From Sphyrna mokarran (lineage: Eukaryota): 64,000 nt of DNA. Where the stretch lies: contig JAGIQG010000013.1 in the NCBI GenBank assembly GCA_024679065.1, forward strand, positions 34,968,001 through 35,032,000, read 5' to 3'. Under the pieces are notes generated by a model that saw nothing but the letters and a program-made list of their open reading frames with translations, searched no databases and was not told the DNA's origin. Each line of letters starts with the position of its first letter. The first letter of the stretch is position 1. The position numbers and the translations under genes were made by a program. Below, piece after piece: positions 1-51,430 of this stretch.

Positions 1-2734
1 CAAAATCTGCCTCAATCAGTGTCTCCTGCGACACACTGAGTAATGGGTTATTGGATGACATCTCACCCAATATTTTTAATCCAAGTGAAAGATTTTGGTT
101 TTGATTCCCTGGTTTTTATCTGTCAGGTACTAGGACAATAGAGGCACCTATATACAAATATATTAGGCACAGAAAACACTTTGTACTTCTGAATGTCTCC
201 CAGTGATCTCTGTTAACGATGTTTGGGCACGCACTTGCACGACTGAATGTGATCATGACGCCCCCTTTGGTCAAACAATATTCTCAGTGATGTTCATTGC
301 CTACACTAGCAGCTAAAGAAAGGCCAAGTTATGTGACAGCTAGTGTGACCTCGGAACTATCCTAAAAATAATTAAATGCCTTCAGGTCCAGTGGAGTGAA
401 AATGGACTTTCTAAAAAAAAACAATGGAACTTCAAAGAAAAGTTGTTAATAGTTCAAGTTCAGTAGCAATCTAAAATAAAGTACTCCATTAAATGGGTGT
501 GATGTACAACACACAGCGATTTTGAGCCCAAAACTCTCCATATGTCTGTTTTCCGGAGTGGTGTCCAAATGCCATAAGATTGGAAAAGTGCAATTCACAT
601 CAGTGTATTCGAGTGATGCAATTTTCAAAGCCCTTCCCCAGTGGAGTAATGTACATCACCCCAAGCAAGGATGAGGAGCTCATTTTAATACATTTGCATC
701 TCACTACCAGGCACTCTCATTGGGTTTTCATCCATGGCGGAATATTCATAGGGGGCCAGAGTGACATCGTGCCAACTACTCTATAAAAAAAATGAACCTG
801 GCACCTTTACCTATGAGGGGGACTTCGGAGGTGAGCGCTTAGGGGAACATTACCATAGAGGTGCTCAGGGCTCTGGGAACACAGGACATGGGGGATGCAG
901 ATAAGTGTAACTTGGGGATAGCAGGTTTAGTCACACAGTTTCAGAGGGAATCCTATCTTCCAGTTGTCTCAGAGTGTTCCCTGCCTCAAAGGGGTCCAGT
1001 GGCTGGCTTGCAGGCAGCACCTCCTGTGTCCTCTCTTCCATGCAGTGGGTGCCTAACCTTTGTGTGTATTTGATTTTGGGTCACATGAGAGAATGCAGAA
1101 GATCAGTATTGGTTTCCAATCTGAGCCCCCATTTGGTGTGAGGGCAGTCTCTGAGGGCACAGTGGGGGAGGTTTTAGTTTTTTCTATTCATTCATGGAAC
1201 ATGAGCATCGCTAGCTTGCCAGCACTTACTGCCCATCCCTAGTTGGCTGAGGGCAGTTGAGAGTCAACCACATTATTGTGGCTCTGGAGTCACAAATAGG
1301 CCAGACCAGGTAAGGATGTCAGATTTTCTTTCCTTAAAGGACATTAGTGAACTAGATGTATGAACCAGTGAACCAGGCTTGATAATCCTCCAATATGGGG
1401 GAGGGAGGGCTGCAATGTATTTTGAACCCCAGGCAACAGTGTGAGCACAAAAGGGTTTAGCTGCATGGAAGTTCAAACCCACTTCTCAGGGAAGTTTGAC
1501 TGTCAGGAATAAGTCTTGGTGTGTATGGCTGTGATTGATGGAAGGTAGTTTATCTTTATAGTCTTGTAGCCTGGGAGAATGAGGTGTCCTCCAGGAATGT
1601 GTTCCACATACTAATTGCAGTCTTATCGGTACCCTTGTCATCCATAAGAGGAAGCCAGTTGCCAAGATAATAATCAAATTCTTCCTTGAATGGTGAATCC
1701 TGCTGAAAGAGACCAATGTGGGGATGTGTCTATAGTCTGAGGCAAGGGTATGAGGGATAGTGGACAGGCACTCACTAAGTGGGGACCACTACAGTGGAAG
1801 TCCTTTGGGCATTGAGGGACAAAAGTCAGGGCTCTGTTATGAATCCTCAGAGCTCTTGTGGTATTCTCCTCTTTTCAGTGCATGATTCTGGAGAATCAAG
1901 GACTCACCTCAGATGAGGGGGAGGCTGGGCCTGAAGCTATTGTGGGAACAGCACTATAGATGCTACAGCCTCATAGGACTCATTATCAAAAAAGGATCTT
2001 CCTCCTCCCCAGCCAGCTCATATGCTGTCTTCTCAAACAGCGTGAGGAATCTGAGCTCTAGTTTAATTCCACAATGCTGAATATGCTTCCCAGGCAGGGG
2101 GCGGTCACCTTGCTGAAAGGACTTCTGAACGACTGTGGATTGAGGACATCACACATCTGCTGCACACCATCCATGAGTTTGGTCAGGACTTCCTCTAAGA
2201 ATTGAATGCTATCTTCCTGATAGGCATTCTGACCAATGAAACTAGAACAAGTGCTGGGAAAACATTTATATGGAGCTATCCATTGATTGCAGCATTTAAG
2301 TTACTCTGAGGTGAGCAAATCGGCAGGACACTGCCACAAATGCAGTGTGAAAATTGTTAAAGAAGGTCAAAATCCCATGAGAAATCCCACCATTTTTGTC
2401 ACCATAACTGTCACTTTGCCAAATTCTGGTAACTTTGCTTCCCACATATACCATTGCGGTGAGTGAGTATCCAATAGCAACACTGTCACTCAGCTGAAGC
2501 AGGTGGTGTAGCCAAATGAAATAAAGGGTTTTTTTGAAGTCTTGCATTTCATCATTTTACGTCTGGATATAATTAGTTGAAAAGACTGAGATCAAATACA
2601 AAATCCTAGCACTCAATGTTAATTCATATTTCAGAGAATAATCCTCAGTTGTTGGTGATTTGCAATCTTTACAATGCTAACATTTTCTGACTGACAGCCA
2701 AATGAGTTAGAATGAAATGTATTTTAGATAATTG

Positions 2735-3045
2735 AATCCCTACACTATAGATGAAGGCCATTCCTCTCATCGAGTTTGTATTGACCATAATATCCACTCA
2801 GGCCCTATTCCCGTAACTCTCATTTACCCAGCTAATCCCTTTGATACAAAGGTCAATTTAGCATGATCAATCAATCTAACTCACACATCTTTAGACTATG
2901 GAGGATAACCAGAATACTCAGAGGAAGCTCACGCTGACATGAGGAGGAAGTGCAAACTCCACACAGACAGTGACCTGAGGCTGGAATTGAACCTGTGTCC
3001 CTGACGCTATGAGATAGCAGTGCTAATCACAGTGCCACTATGTCG
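2735..3045 (-). mobile_element. HE1-type V-SINE
   Basis: tRNA-like A/B boxes and V-domain core. Confidence 0.8.
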
Positions 3046-3229
3046 TTCTAAGTTGTGGACAAATAGACACCTTTTCTCATCACGCCAATCCAGCAATCCC
3101 TCAGATTAACAAAACATGAATAAAAGACAAGTGGGCCTCAGTCTTTTATCAACAGTAGTCCCAAAATATCAATTTGAAAACAGTACAAATAAATGTATTA
3201 ATGCTCTTGTGTGCACCTGATTGTTTGGA

Positions 3230-3760
3230 AGACTTACAGCTGTCAAGAAAAGAAGTTCAACAATTTCCATCTTCACTGTCTGTGTTTTGGGCATATCCTG
3301 GCAGTATAGAGTCACAAAGGTAGCAATCTCCTCAAAGGCGGAGCTCCCAAGTTTGTCAGCACTCTTTACACAGAGACAGCTTTATTGCTTTAGGCACACT
3401 GTCAAGATGGAAGATGATTGTGTACCCAGAACATCTTTGTGCGGTACGGCAGACAGAGCCAGATGACCCGTAGGACATCTCCAGAGTTCCACTTCAAGAG
3501 TGACATGAAGCCTTAGACATTGATTGTCACAATAGGAGTCATTTACTAATGGCAGAAGAAAATGGCACCATTGCCTGTAAGCTGGTACTTGACACCATGA
3601 TGACAAGTGGCTACACTGGCTTGGCAACAGATGCCAACACTGAATACACCAATATACAATGCTACAAATGTAGCTTCACATGGGACATTTGTGGCAGAAC
3701 CTGCTCCTCAGGGATTCAGCCTTGGCTGCACATCTGAAGCTTGTGCAGAAAGGGAAAATG
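3230..3760 (+). mobile_element. Degenerate RTE-type LINE 3' fragment
   Basis: ILGISWQYRVT, KMEDDCVPR, C-terminal ICGRTC. Confidence 0.6.
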
Positions 3761-3999
3761 GGTAGACCCTAAGGAAGTCATGTGATCCTCCACACCCAAT
3801 TGTTCTTGCTGCATTCTCTTAATATCCCAGTAGTAAACAAAATACAGTCCATTGATACTAGATATGTTGTCCCCTTTGCGTTCCCAGTGTATTGTGTTAA
3901 CAAATAACTTAATTAAGTTGACAATAATTCATAATGCATTCAGTTCAGTACAGCATGTGTCCACACTGTGTAGAAAAAGTATCAAAACAATTTACTTAC

Positions 4000-4070
4000 T
4001 TCATTTGCTGATTCATCTATTGATATTTCACTTATTTGATTACCAACATTTTTGCTGTGGATCGATGAAT
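4000..4070 (-). CDS. Gene A exon: cytoplasmic segment (DSSIHSKNVGNQISEISIDESANE)
   Basis: cttaacag acceptor and GAA|gtaagt consensus donor; 71 nt, phase 1-0, open in frame after the TM exon; the final exon was not confidently identified. Confidence 0.62.
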
Positions 4071-4759: not shown

Positions 4760-5900
4760 AACAACCTTAGCAATGTGATGGAGGATGTGACATACTGAAA
4801 ACTTCATTCAATGCTGGTATCTTTAGCTTTGATGGTAGCGTACTGAGCCTGTGTAATGGCAAACTGAACTTGCTTGACTTAATTCTGACTTTTTATGGAA
4901 CCTAGAGGTTGAATGATTTCTATTTGTGGTGCAATAGAGGCTGAGACATCAGGCATTAGATGCTGGATCATGAATGAGTACACATGCATTACATGGAACT
5001 GGACAGCAAGGCCACCAAGCTCTGCACAAAATGTAGTACAAATTGATGCAGGTACCTCCATTGACAAGCCTACCATTGCACCAAGCATTTCAATCATCAT
5101 ATTCTTTTCAAAACTGCAATGTCTTCCCTGTTCAGTACTGCCACCCCATCTCCCTGTCTCACTTCTCTATCTTCTCTGAACAATATATATGCATAATATA
5201 AAGCATCCATTTTAAGCCATGATTCTGATATTGCCACCACATCGTATTCCTTGTGTGGTTCTAGCTCATCAACTTTATTTTTTAACTTTGTATGTCTACA
5301 AACATGCATTCTTAGTCTGTATTTGCATTCCTTGTAACTCTTCTTAGTCATCTTCAATCTAATATAGTACTAAATTCTTCCCTGGTACTATCCAACAGTC
5401 TCAATGAATACATCTTTTTTCTCGTTTTATGCTTGTATATGCTGCTGCCTATTCACCTGGAAATTCAGTTTAAACCATCTCCAATCACACTGGTGCACAT
5501 TCCTGTGTGTACATTAGTCCTGGTCTTATGGAGATATGACCTGTCCTCGTTGAATATGTCTTTTTGCTCCAGGATTAGTTCCAAGGCCCCAAGAATCTGA
5601 AGCCCTCCATCCTACCTCATGCCTCAAGCCAATCATTCATTCTTCCTATCTTCTTATTTCTATCAACATCTGCACAAACACTAGAAGCAATCCTGTACTT
5701 CTGAAAATATGCCTGTAAAACTTCAGTACCTGCTCTCACTACCATTGATACTGAAATGTAGGACAATTTTTGGCTTACTTGCTTCTCTTTGCAGCATATT
5801 CTTCATCCTTTTCATGATGTCCTTTCTTCTGGCACCAGACAGGCAATACACTATGTGAGATTCAGGATGACAATTGGAGACATGCCTGCCCATCCACTTC
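4760..5900 (-). mobile_element. Degenerate CR1 5' region (ORF1 esterase-like and ORF2 EN remnants)
   Basis: CLSGARRKDI...KIVLHFSIN (ORF1 SGNH-like); YDVVAISESWL...GDGVA (APE). Confidence 0.7.
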
Positions 5901-6405: not shown

Positions 6406-6510
6406 CTTTTCCATTCTTCAGTTTACAGCACAAACTCTTAATGATCCAAAGGCAAACAGGTACAATTAGGATCAGACCAAGCAGGCTGAAGTAATAGTAC
6501 TTGGAAACAT
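6406..6510 (-). CDS. Gene A exon: transmembrane segment (DVSKYYYFSLLGLILIVPVCLWIIKSLCCKLKNGK)
   Basis: aattttgaag acceptor and G|gtaatt donor; 105 nt, phase 1-1, in frame with C1; about 20 hydrophobic residues followed by a basic/Cys stop-transfer. Too short for the ORF track. Confidence 0.78.
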
Positions 6511-6865: not shown

Positions 6866-9452
6866 TAAGTGTCAGATTAGAAGGGGAGGAAGACGCTGGT
6901 ACATATGGTCTATAGGCCCCCTTATAGCAACTTTGAAGTGGGGAAGGCTATAAACAAGCAAATAAGAGATGCGTGCAGAAACGAGACAGTGTTAGTAATG
7001 GGCGATTTCAATCTGCGCATTGACTGGGTGACGCAAGTCGGACACGGCGGGCTGGAGGAAGAGTTTTTGGAATGCTGTAGGGATGGGTTCCTTGAACAGT
7101 ATGTTACGGAACTGACGAGAGAGCGTGCTTTCTTAGAACTAGTACTATGTAATGAGATGGGTAGAATTAGGGATATTCATGTGAGGGATCCTCTAGGGAT
7201 GAGTGATCATAGTATGGTAGAATTTATGATGCAGATGGAGGATGAGGTAGTGGAGTCCCAGAGCTGTGTACTAAGCTTGAACAGAGGGGACTATGATCGG
7301 ATGAGAGAGGAATTGGCTACTGTGGATTGGAGGAGTGCGCTGGTTGGTAGGACGGCAGAGGAACAGTGGGGGATTTTTAAAGAGATCTTTTTTGGTACTC
7401 AGCAGAAATATATTCCGATGGTGAAGAAGGACTGTAGGAGAAGGGAAAATCAGCTGAGGTTCTCCAAGGAAATTAGGGAGAGTATTAAATCTAAAGCTGA
7501 GGCATTCAGAACAGCTAAAAATAGTGGGAAATCGGAGGATTGGGAAAGTTTTAAACAACAGCAGAGAGTGACTAAAAAAGGGAAGATGGAATATGAGGCT
7601 AAACTAGCTTGCAACATCAAAAAGGACAGTAAGAGTTTTTATAAGTATATAAAGAAAAGGAGGATGGCCAGAGTAAATGTAGGACCCTTGGAGGATGAGA
7701 GGGGTGGTTTAATGGTGGGTGACAGGGATATGGCAGAGACCTTGAATAAGTTTATTGTGTCGGTCTTTATGGAGGAGGATGTAAATAGCTTGCCCGAACT
7801 CAAGGATAGAAGCGTGGTAGGAGATGAGGTCCTTGATGAGATTACAGTCACTAGCGAGGTGGTGCTTGATAGGCTAATGGGGCTGAGGGCAGATAAGTCC
7901 CCAGAACCGGATGGAATGCATCCCAGGGTTCTCAAGGAAATGGCAGAGGTGATAGTGGATGCCCTGGTAATTATCTTTTCAAAATTCGCTGGACTCCGGA
8001 AAAGTGCCAGAAGATTGGAAAACGGCTAATGTTACGCTGCTGTTTAAAAAGGATAGCAGACAGAAAGCAGGGAATTATAGGCTGGTTAGTTTAACGTTTC
8101 TAGCAGGAAAAATGTTTGAATCTGTAGTCAAAGCAGAAATAATGAGTCACCTGGATACAAACGGTTTGATTAAGTAGATGCAGCATAGATTCGTTAAGGG
8201 GAAGTTGTGCTTGACGAATTTATTGGAGTTCTATGAGGAAGAGACTAGTGTGGTAGATAGAGGAGAATCAGTGGATGTGGTGTTTTTGGATTTCCAGAAA
8301 GCATTTGATAAGGTGCCTCACAAAAGATTGCTGCAGAAGGTTAAAGGAGTCGAAGGTAGGGTGTTAGACTGGATAGAGGATTGGTTGTCTAATAGGAAGC
8401 AGAGGGTAAGTATTAATGGGTGCTATTCTGATTGGCAGCTGGTGACTAGTGGAGTGCCCTAGGGATCAGGGCTGGGGCCTCAACTATTTACCATTTACAT
8501 AAATGATCTGGAGGAAGGGGTAGAGTGCAGGGTGACGAAATTTGCTGATGACACAAAGATGAGTGGAAAAGCAAATTGCGAGGAGGGTGTGGAAAGCCTG
8601 CAGAGGGATCTGGTTAGGTTGAATGAATGGGCGAGGACCTGGCAGATGGAGTATAATGTTAGCAAGTGTGAGGTTATCCACTTTGGTAAGAATAATGATA
8701 GGAAGGACTACTATTTAAATGGAGAAAAGTTGCAGCATGCGACGGTGCAGAGGGACCTGGAGGTCTTTGTGCACCAATCATAAAAACACAGTCTGCAGGT
8801 GTAGAAGGTGATTAAGAAGGCGAATGCAATGTTGGCCTTTATAGCTAGGGGGATAGAATATAAAAGTAGGGAGGTTCTGTTGCAGCTGTATAGGGTACTG
8901 GTGAGGCTGCACTTTTGGTCTCCACATTCGAGGAAGGATATATTGGCCTTTGAGGGGATGCAGAGAAGGTTTACTAGGCTGATACCGGAGATGAATGTGT
9001 TGGATTATGAGGAGAGACTGAATAGGTTTGTACTCTTTGGCGTTTAGAAGGCTGAGAGGGGATCTCTTAGAAATGTATAAGGTCATGAAGGGGATGGATA
9101 GGGTAGAGGTTGAGAGACTCTTCCCACTTGACAAAGATAGCAGGACTAGAGGGAACAACTTCAAGATTGGGGAGGGGGGGATGGTTCAGATCGGAGTTGC
9201 AGAGGGGTTTCTTCACGCAGAGGGTGGTGAATCTTTGGAATTCTCTGCCTGATCAGATGGTGGAGGCTTCCTCACTGAATATGTTCAAGTCAAGAGTGGA
9301 TAGGTTTTTAATTGACAAGGGAATTAAGGGTTACGGGGAGAAAGCAGAAAAGTGGTACTGAACCACTACAGATCAGCCATGATCTTATTGAATGGTGGGG
9401 CATGCTCAAGGGGCTGTATGGCCTACTCCTGCTCCTATTTCTTATGTTCTTC
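6866..9452 (+). mobile_element. CR1/HER1-type LINE, 5'-truncated, ORF2 (EN-RT) pseudogene
   Basis: VYRPP, MGDFN, SDH (EN); DFQKAFDKVPH, SGVP, KFADD (RT); frameshifts and stops; CR1 3' tail. Confidence 0.93.
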
Positions 9453-12146: not shown

Positions 12147-12667
12147 AAAATATTAATTCTGTTCCCTCTCCACTAAAGCTACCTGACTTGATGAGTAAAA
12201 TCAGCCATGATTGAATGGCAGAGCAGTCTCAATGGGCTGAGTGGCCTAATTCTGCCCCTTATAGTCTTTTGAGTACATTCAGCATTTTGTGTTTTTATTT
12301 CAGTTTTCCAGCATTTGCATTATTTTGCTTCTGTAGGAGTTCAGTATTTATTCTTCAGAGTTACAATGCCACTTCTGCTTGATATGTACCCAGAAAGAGA
12401 TTGTATTAGTCAAATTGCACTCTCTTTCCCTAATATTTCTTAAACTAGTAATGAATTCACTACACGCCAAGATTACTTTGAAAAGTTTCTAGTTTGCATA
12501 CAGACACATTTCACCAACCCTCACCTTCTCAAGCACTTCAAGCAACTTTGTAACGATAGCTTTCAACTCTGCTAAACAATATATTTATATGTCATCTCCT
12601 TGTTTCTTTTCCACATGTTGCCTTAAAAGTTCCATTTCTTTTAATGCCAAGATTGAAAAAAGTTGAA

Positions 12668-16059: not shown

Positions 16060-16359
16060 CTCTGCTATGGCTGAAACGTATCCTCTCTGGCTCAGGGAGT
16101 GTGATGTGTTGAACCTCACAAATGACGGTGGTTCCCTGGTCCCAGTGAGTGTCTATAATGTGCAGCCGGGAGCTCAGGTTGTAGCTGCCGTCACTGTTTA
16201 CTATCAGCAAGCCCTGTTCAGTTTGATAGGAGACATCTCCCTCAACAATCCAGGAGATGGTCAGATTACTGGGAAAAAAACCCGCAGCCAAACAAATCAG
16301 AGATGGAAATCCAACTGTTTCTTTCTCGGGATCCGCAGAAAGAGAGATTTCAGGTTTGG
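16060..16359 (-). CDS. Gene A exon: Ig C1-set domain
   Basis: tttag acceptor and G|gtaagt donor; 300 nt, phase 1-1. AKPEISL...LICLAAGFFPSNLTISW...NSDGSYNLSSRL...WDQGTTVICEVQH matches the C1 motifs C-x-x-x-G-F-[FY]-P and C-x-V-x-H. Confidence 0.93.
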
Positions 16360-17903: not shown

Positions 17904-18239
17904 CTTGAATGTTCAGTTTTGTTCCTTCTCCTACAAAGTTTTTCCAGGGCTTAGGGGCCACTCTAAGAACCACGCAGTGGTAAGTGTCGGAATCGTCCAG
18001 AGTCACCTGCCGAATGACAAGTGAACCCTCAGATGGGGACAGGCGAGAGCTTTTCTGGAGGTTATTCTTGGATGCGTTGCCTCTGATGTTCGGGTTGTCT
18101 CTTGCCCTATACCAATAATATCTCATCTCACCCACCCGCTCCTCTCCGGGTATCAGGGTGCAACTTATTCGAGCTGTCTGTCCTGTCAGGAGGGACAGAA
18201 CTGAAGGAAACTGAGTCACGTTCAGACCGACAACAGGTC
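17904..18239 (-). CDS. Gene A exon: germline-joined VJ-type Ig V domain of a non-rearranging antigen-receptor/CD28-like IgSF protein
   Basis: tttcag acceptor and G|gtaatt donor; 336 nt, phase 1-1. GPVVGLNVTQFP...ARISC...YYWYR...LVIRQVTLDDSDTYHC...FVGEGTKLNIQ has canonical C, W, D-x-x-x-Y-x-C and J-like G-x-G-T-x-L in a single exon. Confidence 0.93.
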
Positions 18240-18330
18240 CTGAAACATAAAATTATAACATAATAATTAAACCCAAATAATCTGAGTACAACCAGAATTA
18301 CTGTTAACTGGAGTCCAAGTAAATCCTTAC

Positions 18331-18376
18331 CTACGACACAGAGGCAGAGTTTGAGAATGTATCCAACTGCACCCAT
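18331..18376 (-). CDS. Gene A exon: signal peptide (MGAVGYILKLCLCVV-G)
   Basis: ATG at 18376; 46-nt hydrophobic leader ending phase 1 at a G|gtaagg donor; splices in frame to the VJ exon. Confidence 0.88.
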
Positions 18377-36068: not shown

Positions 36069-36356
36069 CTGTGAACACAGCTCGAGTACGGAGAGGCTCT
36101 TTCATCCACCGATGTTTCTTGGAGCAGATGTAATGGTTCTTTGAGTCATGCTTCTGCTTCAGGTCATGTTCAACATGGAAAAATCCATTGTTGTCTCTGG
36201 TCACGATTGTTTCAGAGAAGTCATTCAGAAGATTACCATGGCTATCTTTCCAGCTGACTTCTGGTTCTGGGTACCAGCCTGAAGATTGGCAAGACAGCAT
36301 GTCATTGCCACTTCCATCAGATTTCCATATGATACGGCTACCGTCACTACTTTGTG
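36069..36356 (-). CDS. Gene B exon: B7/butyrophilin-type IgC domain
   Basis: tttttttctag acceptor and G|gtgggt donor; 288 nt, phase 1-1. LSCQSSGWYPEPEVSW...DNNGFFHV...YIC matches the BTN/B7 C motif C-x-S-x-G-W-Y-P-x-P-x-V-x-W. Confidence 0.92.
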
Positions 36357-36594
36357 CTAGAAAAAAATGACATGCCATTATATAAGGAACCACAAAGATA
36401 ATGTGCCTGTAACCCATTACAGAACATAGCAGCTTTCACAACAGTTGAGAATATGTATTTAAAAGCATATTGTGACCAATAATGCCAAAACTATTTACAG
36501 CAGAGCAAAAATAAAACTACAGGAGATAGGTTCAGTGGTTTATGTTGGAATTAGGAGCTTTGGATAAATGCAGGTATCTTATAATTGTGGAAAA

Positions 36595-39540: not shown

Positions 39541-39636
39541 CCAATAAGATTACCTGTCACTCTTCCAAACTTCAATTAACATTGGTCCAACCTGGAGATC
39601 AGGAGAATCTGGTATATTTTCATTTTTGTTTTGTTT

Positions 39637-41587
39637 GGCTTATGTCAGGATGAGGCTTGAAGGCTCAGTTAGTGCACTGGAAAGCTATAGATTAGCCAGG
39701 AGGGAGCTAAAGAGTGAGTTGAGAAGAGCTAAAAGAGGACACGAGGAGACTTTGGCTGATAGGATCAAGGAGAATCCTAAAGCTTTCTTTAGATATGTTA
39801 AGAATAGAAGATTGGTTAGGGCAAGATTAGGGCCAGTCACAGACAGTATTGGGAAGTTATGCGTGGAGCCTGAAGAGATTGGAGAGGCACTGAACAAATA
39901 TTTCTCTTTGGTATTCATGCAGGGAGATGTAAATGTAGTTGTGGAGAACACTGGGATACAGGGTTGCAAACTGGAAAGTATTGAAGTAGATAAGAAGGAT
40001 GTGCTAGATATTCTTGAGGGTTTGAAGTTAGATAAGTCCCCTGGGCCGGACGGGATTTACCCTAGGATTCTCTGGAAGGCGAGAGAGGCGATTGCAGAGC
40101 CTCTGGCTCTGATCTTCAGGTCGTCGTTGGTTACGGGTATAGTGCCGGAAGACTGGAGGATAGTGAATGTGGTCCCATTGTTCAAGAAGGGGAATAGAGA
40201 CTTTCCGGGGAATTATAGGCTGGTGAGTCTTACTTCTGTTGTGGGCAAAGTATTAGAAAGAAATATTAGGGATAGGATTTATAGTTATTTAGAGAGAAAT
40301 GAATTGATTGGGGATAGTCAGCATGGTTTTGTGAAGGGTAGGTCGTGCCTTACTAACCTCATTGAGTTTTTTGAAAAAGTGACCAAAGAGGTGGATGGTG
40401 GTAAGGCAGTTGATGTGGTATATATGGACTTTAGTAAGGCATTCGATAAGGTGGCCCATGGAAGGCTTCTGCAGAAAATGCAGATGTATGGGATTGAGGG
40501 TGATTAGCTAATTGGATTAGGAATTGGCTAGCAGATAGAAGACAGAGGGTGGTGGTTGATGGGAGATATTCATCGTGGAGTTCGGTTACAAGTGGTGTAC
40601 CTCAGGAATCTGTTTTGGGGCCCCTGCTGTTTGTAATTTTTATAAATGATCTGGATGAGGGTATTGAAGGATGGATTAGTAAATTTGCGGATGACACTAA
40701 AGTCGGAGGAGTGGTAGATAGTGAAGAGGGGTGTTCTAGTTTGCAGAGAGACTTGGACAAGTTGCAGAGCTTGGCCGAGAGGTGGCAAATGGAGTTTAAT
40801 GTGGAAAAGTGTGAGGTAATTCACTTTGGCAGGAATAACAAATGTATAGAGTATAGGGCTAATGGTAGGACTCTTAATAGTGTTGATGAACAGAGGGATC
40901 TTGGTGTACGTGTGCATAGATCCCTGAAAGTTGGCAATCAAGTCGATAAGGTTGTTAAGAAGGCATACGGAGTCTTAGCTTTTATTGGTAGGGGGATTGA
41001 ATTTCAGAGCCGTAACGTCATGTTGCAACTGTACAAAACTCTGGTGCGGCCGCACTTGGAGTATTGTGTGCAGTTCTGGTCCCCACATTATAAGAAAGAT
41101 GTGGAGGCATTGGAGAGGGTACAGAGGAGCTTTACCAGGATGTTGCCTGGTATGGAGGGCAGGTCCTATGAAGAGAGGTTGAAGGATTTGAGTTGTTTTC
41201 GTTAGAAAGGAGGCGGCTAAGAGGGGATCTTATTGAAGCATATAAGATGATTAGAGGTTTAGATAGGGTGGACAGTGATAGCCTTTTTCCTAGGATGGCG
41301 AAAGCTAGCACGAGGGGACATAGCTTTAAATTAAGGGGTGGTAGTTATAGGACGGATATCAGAGGTAGGTTCTTTACCCAGAGGGTGGTAAGGGTATGGA
41401 ATGCCCTGCCTGCTGCAGTGGTAGATGCGCCAAGTTTGGGGGCGTTTAAGAGGTTAGTAGATAAGTTTATGGATGAAAAGGGAATGGTTTAGGTTAGAGG
41501 GTCATTGCTTTTTCTTAATTGGTCGGCGCAACATCGAAGACCAAAGGGCCTATTCTGCACTGTAATGTTCTATGTTCTATCTATGTT
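39637..41587 (+). mobile_element. CR1 LINE, young 5'-truncated copy, in the gene B V-C intron
   Basis: KSPGPDGIYP, QHGFVKGRSCLTNL, DFSKAFDKV, KFADD, RPHLEYCVQFW; few disablements; TTCTATG-type tail. Confidence 0.93.
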
Positions 41588-41740
41588 AGAAGCTATTGCT
41601 GTTATTTCACAGCAAACTTTCTTAATAACTAAATGAAATGAATAATGTCTTTTCCGCTAGAGTCACTGGAAACCTACATAAAAATTTAAATAATTAAACA
41701 CCGAGTGATTCTGAATGCAGATGCAGAACAGATGACATAC

Positions 41741-42076
41741 CCCAAACAGATAGATGTATTGATATTTCACCAAATCCATTGTTATTATACGCTCCGCACT
41801 TGTAGGTTCCTTCATCCCAGATATTGACATTCTTCAGTGTAAGAGATGCATCTCCTTTATTGACTCCATGAAGTTCGGTTCTCTTGGTGTAGTTTTTGTG
41901 CTGATTGCTGAAGTCATGCTCATTTCTTTTGTACTCATGCACAGTTTGATCCACACCTTCCTTCTGCCAGATCACTGTAGGATTATTGTCACCAGTGCTG
42001 TCAAATGTACACTTGAGAATGGCATGTTTGCCAATCTCTACAGCAATGTGCTCCTCAGGGGCAACAATGAATGTCT
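41741..42076 (-). CDS. Gene B exon: B7/butyrophilin-family IgV domain
   Basis: cccttgtgcag acceptor and G|gtatgt donor; 336 nt, phase 1-1. ETFIVAPEEHIAVEIGKHAILKC...VIWQK...VHEY...QHKNYTKRTEL...GDASLTLKNVNIWDEGTYKC is a typical B7/BTN V. Confidence 0.92.
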
Positions 42077-42994
42077 CTGCACAAGGGATGAAAGTACCAC
42101 AGTTAGAAACAAATATTTTAATAATTATTCACATAAATATATATTAGCCTTTTGTTCAGATCAGATCTGTTTATTTCTATCATTTATAAAGAAGTGTTGA
42201 AAAGGTGCATTGTTTCGCTGATAAATGGGTTAGATTGTGATCACAAATTCCTCAAAGTTGGTTTCTGCTTTCTTGCAAATAAACAACAAGGATGAGCTCC
42301 GAGGAATTTCCTGGTCTATGTAGGCCGTTGGTAAGTAGCTGAATGTGTTTTTAATAACATTTGGAGCTAACTTTGAACTAATTGCAATATTGCCATGTCT
42401 ATCTGTTGTTTTCCAGAGCTGTTGTGTACTTGATGGACTGATTGGTATAAATCCCTGATGTCGCTATATGATACCAGTGCTTCACTTGAACTTGCATTTA
42501 GAGATTTTCATTTAGGTACAGAAGTCCACATGAAAGACATCTCATAGTTCAAATATGAAGGGTCATCTAATCTTGAAATATTGGCTCTACTCTCTCTCCA
42601 TAAATGCCGTCAGATTTGCTGAGATTTCCCAGCATTTTTCTGTTTTTGTCACAGCACATGCCTACCTTCATACTCCTGACAAGTTTCAGTTGGTGGGAAA
42701 ACCACCACTATTCTACCTTTCAGGCTTCCAATAAAACAGCAGCAACTTTGGGTTCTGGCAACAATCAGGTCCAGCCTTTGGCACTCACCATTTACAACCA
42801 CAGTGGTGAGAATGTGAGAACAAAATGGATAAGTCCCGTTGACAATTAAATGGCAACCTAAAATGTTTGTCTGAATTCTAGAGTCAAATTAATAGTCAAA
42901 TTATTCAAATCCATGAATTTCTCTGAATTTAGGCTTTTTTTTTATTATTAACAGAGACAAATTTCAGCCAGACAGAAATCTGCTGCACTATTTT

Positions 42995-48359: not shown

Positions 48360-51300
48360 TGAAAGAACAAAGAACAAAACAGCACAGGAAACAGGTCCTT
48401 TGGCCCAACGAGCCCGCACCACCACCCCGATGTTCCCGCCTCTACCCGTGATCCCTGTCTATGTTTATAGATCTATGGATTAAAAACCAAATTTGAGACA
48501 ATTTAGGGAGAATTGTTTTGCCAATTAGCCTAAGAGCACATCTTTGGGATGTGGGAGGAAACCGGAGCACCCAGAGAAAACCCACGCAAGCACGGGGGGA
48601 ATGCGCAAACTCCCACAGACACAGGCCCAAATCCATGTATCTGCACAGCACAGCGATAGTCACTGAGCTGTCGTGTTGCCCATCAAATGTCCAGGTCAAG
48701 CGTACACTAACGACGTGAAGCACTAGGATACTCTCGAAAAAGATCCAAGAGCAGCCCTCTCATGACCCATCGCGTGTATGCCCCTCGTTAGACAACAAGG
48801 TGGACCAAAGCACCTGTACGATAAAAACAAGTACATCAATATCATCATCTATTTACATACTTCCCAGGGACTCCCAAGGCTCATGATCCCTATTTTAAAT
48901 CAGTTTTCTATACCCCTCCATTCCCATTCTGTTCATGTGCCCATCTAAGTATTTCTTAAATAACTCCAGAGTACCTGCCTCCACCACTTTAGTTGGCAGC
49001 GCATTCCATACCCCCACCACCCTGTATGTGAAAAAACTCCCTCTAGCATCCAAATTATACCTTACCCCCCGCACCCTAAGCCCGTGACCCCTCGTGCTAT
49101 TTGAGTCCATCCTAGGAAAAAGCTTAACCCTGTTTACTCTATCTATACCCCTCATAATCTTGTACACCTCTGTTAGATCCCCTTTAAGTCTACGTCTTTC
49201 TGAGGAAAACAGTCCCAATTTGCCTAACCTCTCCTTGTAATTCAGACCTTCCATACCAGGCAGCATCCTGGTAAACCTCCTCTGCACTCTCTCCAGAGTC
49301 TCCACATCCTTCCAGTAGTAAGGCGATCAGAACTGGACGCAGTATTCCAAATGAGGTCTAACCAGCGTTTTATACAACTGCAACATTAAAGGCCAGCTCT
49401 TGTACTCTATACCCCTTCCTATAAACGCTAGCATACCATATGCTTTCTTCACAACCTTCTCCACTTGTTCTGCCACCTTCAGAGACTTGTTCACCTGCAC
49501 CCCCAGGTCCCTCTGCATTTCTGTACTCTTAACAGGTCTACCCTTTATCATATACCTCCCCTCTACATTCTTTCTCCCGAAATGCATCACCTCACATTTA
49601 TGAGGATTGAATTCCATCTGCCATCTGTCTGCCCAAGCTACCAGCCTATCTATGTCCTGCTGCATCACCTGACAATGCTCCTCACTATCCGCAAGTCCAG
49701 CAATCTTTGTATCGTCTGCAAACTTGCTGATCACTCCACTTACTCCCTCTTCCAAATCATTTATATATATTACAAGTAGAAGAGGTCCCAGTACCGAGCC
49801 CTGTGGCACACCACTAGCGACCGACCTCCAGCTAGAAAAACACCCTTCCGCTATTACTCTCTGTCTCCTATTACCAAGCCAGTTACTTATCCATCTAGCT
49901 ACCTGTCCTTGTATCCCATGAGCCTTGACTTTCTCAACTAACCTCCTGAGGGGCTTTGTCAAACGCCTCACTAAAATCCATATAGACGACATCAACAGCT
50001 CGCCCTTCGTCCACCGTTTTCGTCACCTCCTCAAAAAATTCTACCAGATTTGTAAGGCATGACCTCCCCTCAACAAATCCATGCTGCGTATCCCTAATCA
50101 GATTGCAACGGTCTAAGTGCCTATACATCCTATCTCTAAGAATCCCCTCCAACAGCTTCCCTACCACTGACATCAAACTCACCGGCCTATAATTTCCAGG
50201 GTTATCCCTACTACCCTTTTAAAACAATGGTACAACATTAGCTATTATCCAGTCCTCTGGGACCTCACCTGTGTCCAAGGAAGAGACAAAGATTTGCGTC
50301 AGAGGCCCAGCAATTTCACCTTGCACCTCTCTAAGCAGCCTGGGATAAATGCCATCAGGCCCTGGAGATTTATCAGTTTTAATGCTACCTAGAAGCTCTA
50401 ACACTTCCTCCCTCGGTATGGATATTTCCCTCAACTGGTCCACAGCTCCCTCAGAGACAGGAGCTGTCAACAAGTCCCTCTCCTTCGTGAATACCGACGC
50501 AAAGTATTCATTCAGGATCTCCGCCATTCCCTCGGGCTGTAAGCACAGTTCCCCTCCTCTGTCCCTAAGAGGTCCGATTTTTCCTCTAACCACCCTTTTA
50601 TTCCTAACATAGGAGTAAAAAACCTTTGGATTTTCCTTAATCCTATCTGCCAAAATCATTTCATGCCCCCTTTTTGCCCTTCTAACTCCCCGTTTGAGCT
50701 CCCTCCTATTCTCTCTATATTCCTCCAACGCTGTCTCCGTTCCCAGCTGCTTTGACCTATCATACGCCTCTCTTTTCTTCCTAACCAAGTCCTCAAAATC
50801 CCTAGTAATCCACAGCTCTCTAATCCTTCCTTTCCCATCTTTCCTCTTGGCCGGCACATATTTATCTTGCAACATTTTCAGTATTCCCTTGAAAGACTCC
50901 CACATGCCTAGCGTGGACTTGCCCTCGAACAACCATTCCCAATCAGTTTCCATAAGTTCCTGCCTAATCTGACCATAGTTAGCCTTCCCCCAATTCAGCA
51001 CCCTGCCCCTAGGGCAACAAGCATCCTTTTCCATCTGTACCCTAAAGCAGACAGAATTGTGGTCACTGTTAGGCACATGTTCCCCTACTACAGCATCAAC
51101 CACCTGCCCTGGCTCATTACTCAGAACTAAATCCAATATAGCCCCTTCTCTGGTCGGGCTAGCCACATACTGCTCCAACGATCCTTCCAGTACACATTTT
51201 ACAAATTCCTGCCCGTCTAAACCCCCAGCTTTAGGTACTTTCCAATCCACCCTAGGGAGATTAAAATCTCCCACTGTAACGACTCTGTTCTTTCTGCACC

Positions 51301-51430
51301 TATCCAAAATGTCTTTACATATGCCTTCTTCAACTATCTGCGGGCTGTTGGGAGGCCTATAATACACCCCCAGCATGGTAATCGCCCCCTTTCTATTCCT
51401 CAACTCCACCCACAGTGACTCCAGGGTTGT
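48360..51430 (-). mobile_element. CR1 LINE (EN-RT) whose 3' end continues into a V-SINE-derived segment
   Basis: YYRPPN, GDFN, SDH, GVPQGSVLGP, KFADD; after the stop at 48895, a unique 3' UTR runs into a V-SINE core at 48685-48520 and a GTTCTTT tail. Confidence 0.9.

What the first reader, a model, noticed from the sequence alone, without database searches (positions are those of the whole stretch)
17904..18120. CD28/CTLA-4 B7-binding signatures in a V domain that is followed by a C1 domain
The FG loop C-V-V-L-R-V-A-P-K-P-W-K-N-F-V-G-E-G-T has the same length and register as CTLA-4 C-K-V-E-L-M-Y-P-P-P-Y-Y-L-G-I-G-N-G-T (P-x-P-aromatic, then G-x-G-T). The C-strand E-M-R-Y-Y-W-Y-R aligns with CTLA-4 E-V-R-V-T-V-L-R and CD28 E-F-R-A-S-L-H-K, keeping the E-x-R residues that contact B7. 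Unlike CD28-family members, it retains the canonical Trp and has a C1 domain. It may be an intermediate between costimulatory and antigen receptors. The alignment was done by eye.
Basis: partly seen in the sequence, partly recalled or inferred. Interest (0 to 1): 0.8.

Follow-up and report, generated by a model that had tools for sequence, protein, structure and literature searches.

The report
Shark germline VJ-C1 inhibitory-type receptor gene
The stretch is the V exon of a non-rearranging, antibody-shaped surface receptor conserved in sharks and rays; one loop does resemble CD28/CTLA-4, but nothing shows that it binds B7 or belongs to that family.

Summary
The sequence is real. On the minus strand a single exon (18239..17904) encodes a germline-joined V+J domain. 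It is followed by a C1-set exon (16359..16060), a transmembrane exon (6510..6406) and a first cytoplasmic exon (4070..4000). Orthologues occur in at least 12 other elasmobranch species, nearest Mustelus asterias (84% identity in V). NCBI names them automatically "SIRP-like" or "Ig kappa-like". Their tails carry ITIM/ITSM-like tyrosines.

A lungfish CD28-like protein aligns without gaps over 39 residues, with P-x-P-aromatic and G-x-G-T in register. The likeness stops there: strands A to E show none (Z 1.4). The E of "E-x-R" is present in 1 of 13 species. P-x-P-W is present in 5 of 13; the conserved core is P-W-K.

The domain misses Pfam's CD28/ICOS-type V model. It has a C1 domain. It lacks the CD28-type transmembrane motif, and its orthologues lack CD28-type cytoplasmic motifs. 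By profile it is closest to other VJ-C1 receptors, then to SIRPs.

Verdict: a new member of a known kind, not a CD28-family member, and B7 binding is unsupported. A paralogous P-P-P-bearing VJ-C1 family (Pristis, Callorhinchus) is a better CD28-like candidate. Earlier notes of this scan flag many similar VJ-C1 genes elsewhere in this genome.

The parts
18331..18376 (-). Leader exon (coding part), M-G-A-V-G-Y-I-L-K-L-C-L-C-V-V, ending in phase 1 before a gtaagg donor
   Evidence: Read. tblastn with the Mustelus leader gives 18376..18329, 75% identity.
17904..18239 (-). Germline-joined VJ exon: V-set domain with a J-like F-V-G-E-G-T-K-L-N-I-Q, one open frame, acceptor tttcag, donor G|gtaatt (phase 1). 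No split between V and J.
   Evidence: V-set 5.9e-11. AlphaFold model pLDDT 86.5.
18106..18129 (-).
   Evidence: E present in 1 of 13 species; R/K in 13 of 13.
17920..17976 (-). F-strand Cys, FG loop and start of G strand: C-V-V-L-R-V-A-P-K-P-W-K-N-F-V-G-E-G-T
   Evidence: Gapless alignment to lungfish CD28-like P0078. Conservation.
16060..16359 (-). C1-set constant-type exon, phase 1 to phase 1
   Evidence: Pfam C1-set 3.7e-15. Best single-domain PDB match is an IgG CH3-type domain at 39.6 bits; shark UrIg2 chain 9dmx_A is also listed.
6406..6510 (-). Transmembrane exon, D-V-S-K-Y-Y-Y-F-S-L-L-G-L-I-L-I-V-P-V-C-L-W-I-I-K-S-L-C-C-K-L-K-N-G-K. Uncharged span, no Y-x-x-x-x-T.
   Evidence: tblastn with orthologue tails, E 5e-14 to 2e-19. 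DNA read.
4000..4070 (-). First cytoplasmic exon, D-S-S-I-H-S-K-N-V-G-N-Q-I-S-E-I-S-I-D-E-S-A-N-E, donor gtaagt. The tyrosine-motif exons of the orthologues were not found in 1..3999, so they probably lie beyond the window's left edge.
   Evidence: 81% identity to Mustelus. Motif scan negative.

Best explanation
What it is. The stretch is the VJ exon of a non-rearranging type I membrane receptor gene: split leader, germline-joined VJ, one C1-set domain, uncharged transmembrane segment, cytoplasmic tail. The gene is orthologous to a single family conserved in sharks and rays. NCBI's pipeline names its members 'SIRP-alpha-like', 'SIRP-beta-1-like' or 'Ig kappa light chain-like'.

How it most likely works.
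- The V domain sits on the C1 stalk and binds an unknown ligand. Binding would be through its conserved loop residues: G-E-E-R in the BC loop, R-D-N-P after strand C, and P-W-K in the FG loop. This step is inferred.
- Tyrosines in the tail then recruit SH2 phosphatases and damp cell activation. In the orthologues these are an L-x-Y-A-x-V ITIM, followed about 28 residues later by a T/S-E-Y-A-V-L ITSM-like motif, plus further tyrosine motifs in sharks. This step is inferred by analogy with SIRP-alpha and PD-1, whose signalling I recall and did not test.
- Rays also have a partner form with Arg in the transmembrane segment and a short tail. The family therefore looks like a paired inhibitory/activating receptor system.

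The CD28/CTLA-4 likeness. The FG-loop likeness is real but confined to strands E to G. It is a trait shared with several other non-rearranging VJ receptors. It is not evidence of B7 binding or of CD28-family membership.
For: Gene anatomy. Pfam V-set and C1-set.

Orthologues. HMMER over 1.84 billion proteins gave 101 hits at E up to 0.001. The best single-V hits are V-C1-TM proteins of Scyliorhinus, Pristis, Hypanus and Narcine. A word-index search with P0001 gave 15 proteins at E up to 1e-5 from 2070 candidates, all of this family. Mustelus P0119 is 84% identical in V and 80% in C1, and its TM exon matches.

Tree of 35 V domains. The family (13 rows) is one clade (97/97) with a shark/ray split. 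Window plus Mustelus is supported at 100/98. The SIRP clade is separate (96/92).

hhalign with the family profile:
- P-P-P VJ-C1 group: probability 99.2, score 108.8, 108 columns.
- Other VJ-C1 group: 99.2, 108.9, 106 columns.
- SIRPs: 98.0, 77.1, 105 columns.
- CD28 group: 86.5, 38.5, only 36 columns.

Tails. L-[HQ]-Y-A-x-V in 9 of 11; x-E/V-Y-A-x-L in 11 of 11 (T at -2 in 8); Y-x-x-M and Y-x-N in 0 of 11. Charged-TM, short-tail forms are P0103 (Pristis) and P0130 (Hemitrygon).

PDB. The whole V domain matches antibody light-chain V and shark VNAR (best 2.8e-7; 60 of 60 rows shown). Foldseek puts VNAR, TCR and SIRP-alpha on top.
Against: - The tyrosine-motif exons of this particular gene are not in the window. 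Its inhibitory nature rests on orthology.
- No RNA run was listed, so expression and splicing are unverified.
- No ligand is known.
- My comparison set held no IgL, TCR, NKp30, PRARP or UrIg V sequences. The nearest named family is therefore not settled.
- The E-to-G similarity to CD28 is as strong as to the nearest VJ-C1 relatives. In the tree the CD28-like rows fall, unresolved and on a 2.35-long branch, on the same weakly supported side (81/82) as this family. A deep link to the CD28 family is therefore not excluded.
Confidence: 0.8

Rival explanations
1. The gene is a true relative of the CD28/CTLA-4 family: a V domain of that lineage that still carries a C1 domain. It would use its P-x-P-aromatic FG loop to bind a B7-family ligand, perhaps the B7/butyrophilin-like gene 16-24 kb away.
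For: - Gapless 39-residue alignment to lungfish CD28-like P0078, with P-x-P-aromatic, F and G-x-G-T in register.
- E-to-G part Z 16.0, above SIRPs.
- hhalign probability 73-87 over 36 columns.
- P at +7 and +9 in 7 of 13 species; Mustelus has P-L-P, the cartilaginous-fish CD28/CTLA4 form of the motif.
- A B7/BTN-like gene lies beside it.
Against: - No PF15910 hit, while the CD28 controls score 39.5 and 33 bits.
- The A-to-E part has no similarity (Z 1.4).
- E of E-x-R in 1 of 13 species; no triple proline in any of the 13.
- A C1 domain is present. No Y-x-x-x-x-T in the window's TM exon. No Y-x-x-M or Y-x-N in 11 of 11 orthologue tails.
- No CTLA-4, CD28 or ICOS in the top rows.
- Cartilaginous fish already have their own CD28/CTLA4 cassette elsewhere.
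Confidence: 0.1
2. It is the elasmobranch (co-)orthologue of the SIRP family and binds CD47 or a related ligand.
For: - NCBI names.
- V with a J-like motif plus C1-set domains plus an ITIM tail, and a charged-TM partner form.
- The best, though non-significant, PDB match of the 30-residue F-G segment is SIRP-beta-1 (E 0.23), with four SIRP-alpha rows among the 11 hits.
- SIRP-alpha is rank 7 in Foldseek.
- hhalign probability 98.0 over 105 columns.
Against: - The SIRP rows form their own clade (96/92) away from the family.
- The hhalign score to SIRPs (77) is lower than to the other VJ-C1 groups (109).
- Sharks have one C1 domain. The second C1 of Hypanus and Mobula is a near-copy of the first, so it is a lineage-specific duplication.
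- Synteny was not testable, and no mammalian SIRP was in the tree.
Confidence: 0.12
3. It is a germline-joined immunoglobulin light-chain gene, or a relic of one.
For: - The top PDB sequence matches are kappa/lambda V domains.
- NCBI names two orthologues 'Ig kappa light chain-like'.
- The J-like G-E-G-T-K-L-N-I-Q is present.
- Elasmobranch lambda genes are germline-joined (passage).
Against: - Conserved TM and cytoplasmic exons with tyrosine motifs.
- None of the hits of up to 520 residues examined among the 101 has the V-C1, no-TM, about 235-residue architecture of a light chain, apart from splice isoforms of VJ-C1 receptors.
- PDB light chains score 32-34 bits, against 36-48 bits for the VJ-C1 receptors P0027, P0042, P0095 and P0100.
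Confidence: 0.02
4. This copy is a non-functional gene, with its tail lost or never expressed.
For: The tyrosine-motif exons are not seen in the window. No RNA run was listed. There are long LINE-rich introns.
Against: All five visible exons are open with canonical splice sites, and they are 75-92% identical to Mustelus. Only 4 kb of window remain downstream of the last visible exon, less than the 9.5 kb intron seen upstream.
Confidence: 0.05

Closest known systems
Elasmobranch 'SIRP-like' gene models, e.g. Mustelus asterias P0119 and Scyliorhinus canicula XP_038658211 (P0001)
   Same: Same exon plan and domains. 84% (V) and 80% (C1) identity to Mustelus. Identical TM exon motif. One clade in the V tree.
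   Different: Species-level differences only. E37 and P-K-P-W are this species' version of a loop that reads P-L-P-L in Mustelus and P-R-P-W in four other sharks, and is absent in Scyliorhinus.
Other non-rearranging VJ-C1-TM receptors: Callorhinchus P0027, Pristis P0095, Rhinatrema P0042, Polyodon P0100. These are possibly the PRARP kind of Fu et al. 2019, a paper I could not read.
   Same: VJ + C1 + TM architecture. Full-length profile match (probability 99.2). A 14-residue FG loop with P at +7 and +9, then G-x-G-T.
   Different: 30-37% identity. P0027 and P0095 carry a true P-P-P and match Pfam PF15910; the window's domain does not.
SIRP family (SIRP-alpha, -beta, -gamma)
   Same: J-like V domain on C1-set domains. 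ITIM tail, or charged TM with a short tail. Works as paired receptors. Fold and profile similarity.
   Different: Separate clade. One C1 instead of two. Ligand unknown.
CD28/CTLA-4/ICOS family, as defined by Quiniou et al. 2024, PMC11599192
   Same: FG-loop length. P-x-P-aromatic and G-x-G-T in register. Local alignment of strands E to G.
   Different: Has a C1 domain and the canonical Trp. No P-P-P. No PF15910 match. No Y-x-x-x-x-T. Orthologue tails have ITIM/ITSM-like motifs instead of Y-x-x-M or Y-x-N. Strands A to E are unrelated.
UrIg / UrIg2 (non-rearranging shark antibody-like genes; PMC12227049)
   Same: Split leader, single-exon VJ and C1-type domains. UrIg2 chain 9dmx_A is among the PDB matches of the C1 exon.
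   Different: UrIg2 has nine C1-type domains and an Fc-like dimer. This gene has one C1. UrIg2 is not among the 60 V-domain matches shown.

Membership tests
CD28/CTLA-4/ICOS family (Quiniou et al. 2024) | A single extracellular V domain and no constant-type domain | tested here: not met
   C1-set exon at 16359..16060, Pfam 3.7e-15. All full-length orthologues have V + C1. Definition read.
CD28/CTLA-4/ICOS family (Quiniou et al. 2024) | P-P-P (or P-[P/L]-P in cartilaginous fish) in the FG/CDR3 loop; [M/L/I]-[Y/F]-P-P-P-Y in CTLA-4 | tested here: not met
   The window has A-P-K-P-W. 0 of 13 species have P-P-P and 1 of 13 (Mustelus) has P-L-P. Motif definition.
CD28/CTLA-4/ICOS family (Quiniou et al. 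2024) | G-x-G in the G strand (CTLA-4 and cartilaginous-fish members) | tested here: met
   G-E-G-T; G103 in 13 of 13 and G105 in 12 of 13. This is not specific: it is shared by all joined-VJ domains.
CD28/CTLA-4/ICOS family (Quiniou et al. 2024) | Match to the family's V-domain profile (Pfam PF15910 V-set_2) | tested here: not met
   No hit at E up to 10 for the window V or for Mustelus P0119. Controls: P0078 39.5 bits and P0134 33 bits, cut-off 28. HMMER's filters may hide very weak hits.
CD28/CTLA-4/ICOS family (Quiniou et al. 2024) | Y-x-x-x-x-T dimerisation motif in the transmembrane segment | tested here: not met
   Absent from the window's TM exon. Present in 2 of 11 orthologues (Hypanus, Mobula). 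Both CD28 controls have Y-S-L-I-I-T.
CD28/CTLA-4/ICOS family (Quiniou et al. 2024) | Cytoplasmic Y-x-x-M / Y-x-N signalling motif | tested here: inconclusive
   The window's own tail exons are not in view. 0 of 11 orthologue tails have either motif.
CD28/CTLA-4/ICOS family (Quiniou et al. 2024) | Position in the conserved three-gene cd28/ctla4/icos cassette | not testable with these tools
   No second V of this kind in the 64 kb.
PD-1 | Single V, stalk, TM, ITIM + ITSM; CDR3 loop without conserved prolines | tested here: not met
   C1 domain present, and prolines conserved in the FG loop. An ITIM followed by an ITSM-like motif is present in the orthologues. Fold match Z 12.1 is tied with many Ig domains.
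SIRP family | V + two C1-set domains, ITIM tail or charged TM; clusters with SIRPs | tested here: inconclusive
   The architecture is similar, but there is one C1. Reptile and unnamed SIRP rows form a separate clade, 96/92. hhalign probability 98.0. No mammalian SIRP sequence and no synteny were available.
PRARP (Fu et al. 2019) | Non-rearranging VJ + C domain + TM genes of bony vertebrates. Details are recalled; the paper is not held. | not testable with these tools
The family is only named.
UrIg / UrIg2 | VJ followed by several C1-type domains; MHC- or antigen-receptor-complex-linked | tested here: not met
   One C1 exon, then the TM exon. Description read.
NKp30 (NCR3) | A single VJ-type domain without a C domain (recalled; the papers are not held) | tested here: not met
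   C1 domain present. Fold match Z 11.2 at 27% identity and Foldseek rank 38, neither standing out.
Germline-joined Ig light chain | V-J-C secreted chain without a TM or signalling tail | tested here: not met
   TM and cytoplasmic exons are conserved with the orthologues.

The most novel reading that the evidence does not exclude
The 14-residue FG loop with prolines at +7 and +9 followed by G-x-G-T is a shared inherited trait. It would link an old group of non-rearranging VJ-C1 (and V-V) inhibitory receptors of cartilaginous fish and amphibians to the CD28 family. On this reading CD28-type V domains descend from such a VJ-C1 receptor by loss of the C1 domain.

The window's gene would be a side branch of that group. 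The P-P-P-bearing Pristis and Callorhinchus genes, which reach Pfam's CD28/ICOS V model, would be the closest survivors. The neighbouring B7/butyrophilin-like gene could then be a linked ligand, as proposed for NKp30 and B7H6.
Probability: 0.12. Interest if true: 0.8.

Novelty: new member of a known kind. Interest (0 to 1): 0.4.

Why it matters
Non-rearranging VJ-C1 genes are studied as relics of the gene that the RAG transposon split to create antibodies and T-cell receptors (passages). [quoted passage not shown]

This gene adds one well-conserved elasmobranch family to that set. It has a clear inhibitory/activating pairing and a constrained FG loop (P-W-K).

The more useful outcome is a correction and a lead:
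- The lead: within my small comparison set, the CD28 profile is nearest to a paralogous P-P-P-bearing VJ-C1 family. That is a testable pointer to where CD28-type V domains may have come from.

Tried and rejected
- The V exon alone in the word-index search found nothing, because of the length window.
- A 12-row profile of the E-F-G segment against the PDB was swamped by multi-Ig adhesion proteins matching the generic L-x-I-x-x-V-x-x-x-D-x-G-x-Y-x-C motif. It said nothing about CTLA-4.
- The fold searches cannot discriminate. All Ig V/I domains are tied within about 2 Z units, so I use them only to say that CTLA-4 and CD28 are not favoured.
- The protein-atlas search gave only generic V-set clusters, one of them auto-named 'PD-1 family' at 0.94. 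I gave it no weight.
- I looked for an alternative activating-type TM exon in the 9.5 kb intron and found none.
- I looked for tyrosine-motif tail exons in 1..3999 and found none. The weak hit Q-A-Q-Y-A-T-I-K-A-K-D at 4851..4819 is out of exon order and was rejected.
- The J-like peptide at 12228..12148 has no V upstream and is a chance match.
- I first judged P-x-P-W 'not conserved' from four orthologues. I revised this once 12 species were in hand.
- In-print status. I found no paper on this elasmobranch family in searches. The library lacks most Journal of Immunology papers, so this is not evidence that none exists.
- Papers. Fu 2019, Flajnik 2023, Flajnik 2012 and Ohta & Flajnik 2015 are not held; what I say of them is recalled.
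- Supplements. [quoted passage not shown] They may bear on the motif definitions used here.
Full report
**Observation.**
On the minus strand, one open exon runs from an acceptor (tttcag) at 18239 to a phase-1 donor (G|gtaatt) after 17904. It encodes a complete V domain ending in the J-like F-V-G-E-G-T-K-L-N-I-Q. V and J are therefore joined in the germline.
- Pfam calls it V-set (5.9e-11) and calls the next exon (16359..16060) C1-set (3.7e-15).
- The C-strand string is at 18129..18106, nine bases beyond the stated end.
- A split leader lies at 18376..18331.
- tblastn with orthologue tails finds a transmembrane exon (6510..6406) and a first cytoplasmic exon (4070..4000).
- The tyrosine-motif exons seen in orthologues were not found in 1..3999. 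The gene most likely runs off the left edge of the window.
Each was searched on its own.

**What it is.**
HMMER over 1.84 billion representatives gave 101 hits at E up to 0.001. The best single-V hits are V-C1-TM proteins of Scyliorhinus, Pristis, Hypanus and Narcine, which NCBI names SIRP-alpha-like or SIRP-beta-1-like. A second search with P0001 gave 15 family proteins at E up to 1e-5 out of 2070 candidates. It added Mustelus, Heptranchias, Mobula, Stegostoma, Hemiscyllium, Heterodontus, Cetorhinus and Hemitrygon.
- Mustelus asterias is nearest: 84% identity in V and 80% in C1, with a matching TM exon. The window therefore comes from a related shark.
- I built a maximum-likelihood tree of 35 V domains, using one row per species for the family. 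Isoforms, duplicates and the partial P0045 were left out.
- In that tree the 13 family rows form one clade (97/97) with a shark/ray split, and window plus Mustelus is supported at 100/98. This is the pattern of an orthologous gene kept since the shark-ray split.

**How it probably works.**
The orthologue tails carry several tyrosine motifs:
- L-[HQ]-Y-A-x-V in 9 of 11;
- x-[EV]-Y-A-x-L in 11 of 11 (T at -2 in 8 of them), which lies 28 residues after the first motif in Scyliorhinus P0001;
- further V-x-Y-S-x-V and T-x-Y-A-S-L motifs in sharks.

These are ITIM/ITSM-like. Recruitment of SH2 phosphatases is inferred by analogy with SIRP-alpha and PD-1, which I recall and did not test.

Pristis P0103 and Hemitrygon P0130 have the same ectodomain on a transmembrane segment with Arg and a short tail. 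This is the usual mark of an activating partner. Heptranchias and Heterodontus have predicted isoforms that skip the TM exon.

Within the V domain the invariant or nearly invariant surface-loop residues are G-E-E-R (BC loop), R-D-x-P after strand C, and P97-W98-K99 in the FG loop. The ligand is unknown. No RNA run was listed, so expression is untested.

**The CD28/CTLA-4 claim.**
I obtained a real family member from the tools. P0078 (lungfish, 'CD28-like') has human CD28 (1.1e-20), CTLA-4 (7.6e-16) and ICOS (3.1e-6) as its best solved relatives.

For the claim:
- BLASTP aligns window residues 72-110 to P0078 without gaps: 12 of 39 identical, 25 of 39 positive, E 6e-8 for that single comparison. 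P-x-P-aromatic, F and G-x-G-T are in register.
- By shuffling, the E-to-G third scores Z 16.0. That is as high as for the nearest VJ-C1 relatives (15.6-19.0) and higher than for SIRPs and other VJ-type domains (7.6-12.9).
- P at both positions occurs in 7 of 13 species, and Mustelus has P-L-P.

Against the claim:
- The A-to-E part, which holds 'E-x-R', scores Z 1.4. The other ten non-orthologue comparators score 5.1-15.1.
- The E is present in 1 of 13 species, while the basic residue is present in 13 of 13.
- No species has P-P-P, and P-x-P-W is complete in 5 of 13.
- Pfam's CD28/ICOS V model PF15910 gives no hit at E up to 10, while P0078 and P0134 score 39.5 and 33 bits against a cut-off of 28.
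- hhalign joins the family profile to the CD28 profile over 36 columns only (probability 86.5, score 38.5). It joins it over 105-108 columns to VJ-C1 groups (99.2, score 109) and to SIRPs (98.0, score 77).
- The PDB sequence search of the whole V domain shows antibody light-chain V constructs and shark VNARs in 60 of 60 rows.
- The 30-residue F-G segment gives 11 hits, all non-significant. SIRP-beta-1 is best (E 0.23) and none is from the CD28 family.
- CTLA-4, CD28 and ICOS are absent from the top 50 of both fold searches. PD-1 (Z 12.1), NKp30 (11.2), SIRP-gamma (11.1) and BTLA (11.1) are tied with many Ig domains. The model has pLDDT 86.5.
- The family features listed by Quiniou et al. 2024 were read in sections 10, 21 and 23. 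A single V domain, the TM Y-x-x-x-x-T motif and the P-P-P or P-[P/L]-P loop motif are not met in this gene. No orthologue tail has the cytoplasmic Y-x-x-M or Y-x-N motif.

**A wider pattern.**
Thirteen of these 22 segments come from eight genes outside the family:
- Callorhinchus P0027 (I-P-P-P-I);
- Pristis P0095 (I-P-P-P-T);
- Ambystoma P0073 (L-P-P-P-A);
- Rhinatrema P0042;
- Cetorhinus P0020;
- Pristiophorus P0075;
- Amblyraja P0066;
- the lungfish CD28-like protein P0078.

These proteins were collected by similarity to the window's V domain, so the count is biased.

P0095 reaches PF15910 at 28.7 bits (cut-off 28) and P0027 scores 17.8 bits. The two-row CD28 profile aligns to these two over 113 columns (probability 96.1, score 55.5). 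Against SIRPs its probability is 13, and against a teleost group it is 4.

Within this small set there is a gradient: CD28, then P-P-P VJ-C1 receptors, then the window's family, then SIRPs. The set held no IgL, TCR, CD8, NKp30 or PRARP rows, and the profiles are thin. I treat the gradient as a lead, not a finding.

**Context.**
- A B7/butyrophilin-like gene lies on the same strand at about 36-42 kb. Its IgV exon is intact. Its IgC exon matches Pfam C2-set_3 at 4e-17, with PDB best matches BTNL8, BTN1A1 and CD276.
- Earlier notes of this scan record the same VJ-C1 gene and the B7-like gene. They also record a further VJ gene next to TRIM45 just beyond the window, and many VJ-C1-ITIM genes on other pieces of this genome. 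I did not test these notes beyond this window.

**Verdict.**
The FG and G-strand likeness to CD28/CTLA-4 is real, local and partly conserved. The C-strand likeness is not.

The gene is a member of a conserved elasmobranch family of non-rearranging VJ-C1 receptors. In architecture and in its orthologues' tyrosine motifs it resembles SIRP-type paired receptors, so that is how I infer it works. It fails the membership tests for the CD28 family, and nothing here speaks for B7 binding.

It is a new member of a known kind. The gene models exist in public annotation under automatic names. I found no paper on the family in searches, in a library that lacks most of the relevant journal.

Noticed in passing
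window 36110-36400 and 41740-42090, minus strand: B7/butyrophilin-like gene 16-24 kb upstream of the receptor gene, in the same orientation. The IgV exon is intact. The IgC exon matches Pfam C2-set_3 at 4e-17, with PDB best matches BTNL8, BTN1A1 and CD276. A VJ-type receptor linked to a B7-family gene recalls NKp30/B7H6; that is recalled, the paper is not held.
   Followed up: partly
proteins P0095 (Pristis pectinata XP_051870431) and P0027 (Callorhinchus milii XP_007893987), not in the window: VJ-C1-TM receptors with a true P-P-P FG loop plus G-x-G. They match Pfam's CD28/ICOS V model PF15910 at 28.7 and 17.8 bits (cut-off 28). They align to a CD28 profile over 113 columns. They are a better candidate for 'a CD28-like V on a C1 stalk' than the window's gene.
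   Followed up: partly
proteins P0103 (Pristis) and P0130 (Hemitrygon), not in the window: Activating-type partners of the family: the same ectodomain, Arg in the transmembrane segment and a short tail. No such alternative exon was found in the window's 9.5 kb C1-TM intron.
   Followed up: yes
proteins P0104 (Hypanus) and P0121 (Mobula), not in the window: These ray orthologues carry two near-identical C1 domains, a lineage-specific exon duplication. They also have Y-F-A-L-L-T (Y-x-x-x-x-T) at the start of the transmembrane segment.
   Followed up: no
window 6905-8029 (+), 39626-41492 (+), 49327-51409 (-): Long ORFs that look like LINE endonuclease/reverse-transcriptase remnants by eye (F-A-D-D-T motif) in the translations. 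One sits in the C1-TM intron. They were not tested against Pfam.
   Followed up: no
If so, the window lies in a cluster of VJ-type and B7-type genes.
   Followed up: no
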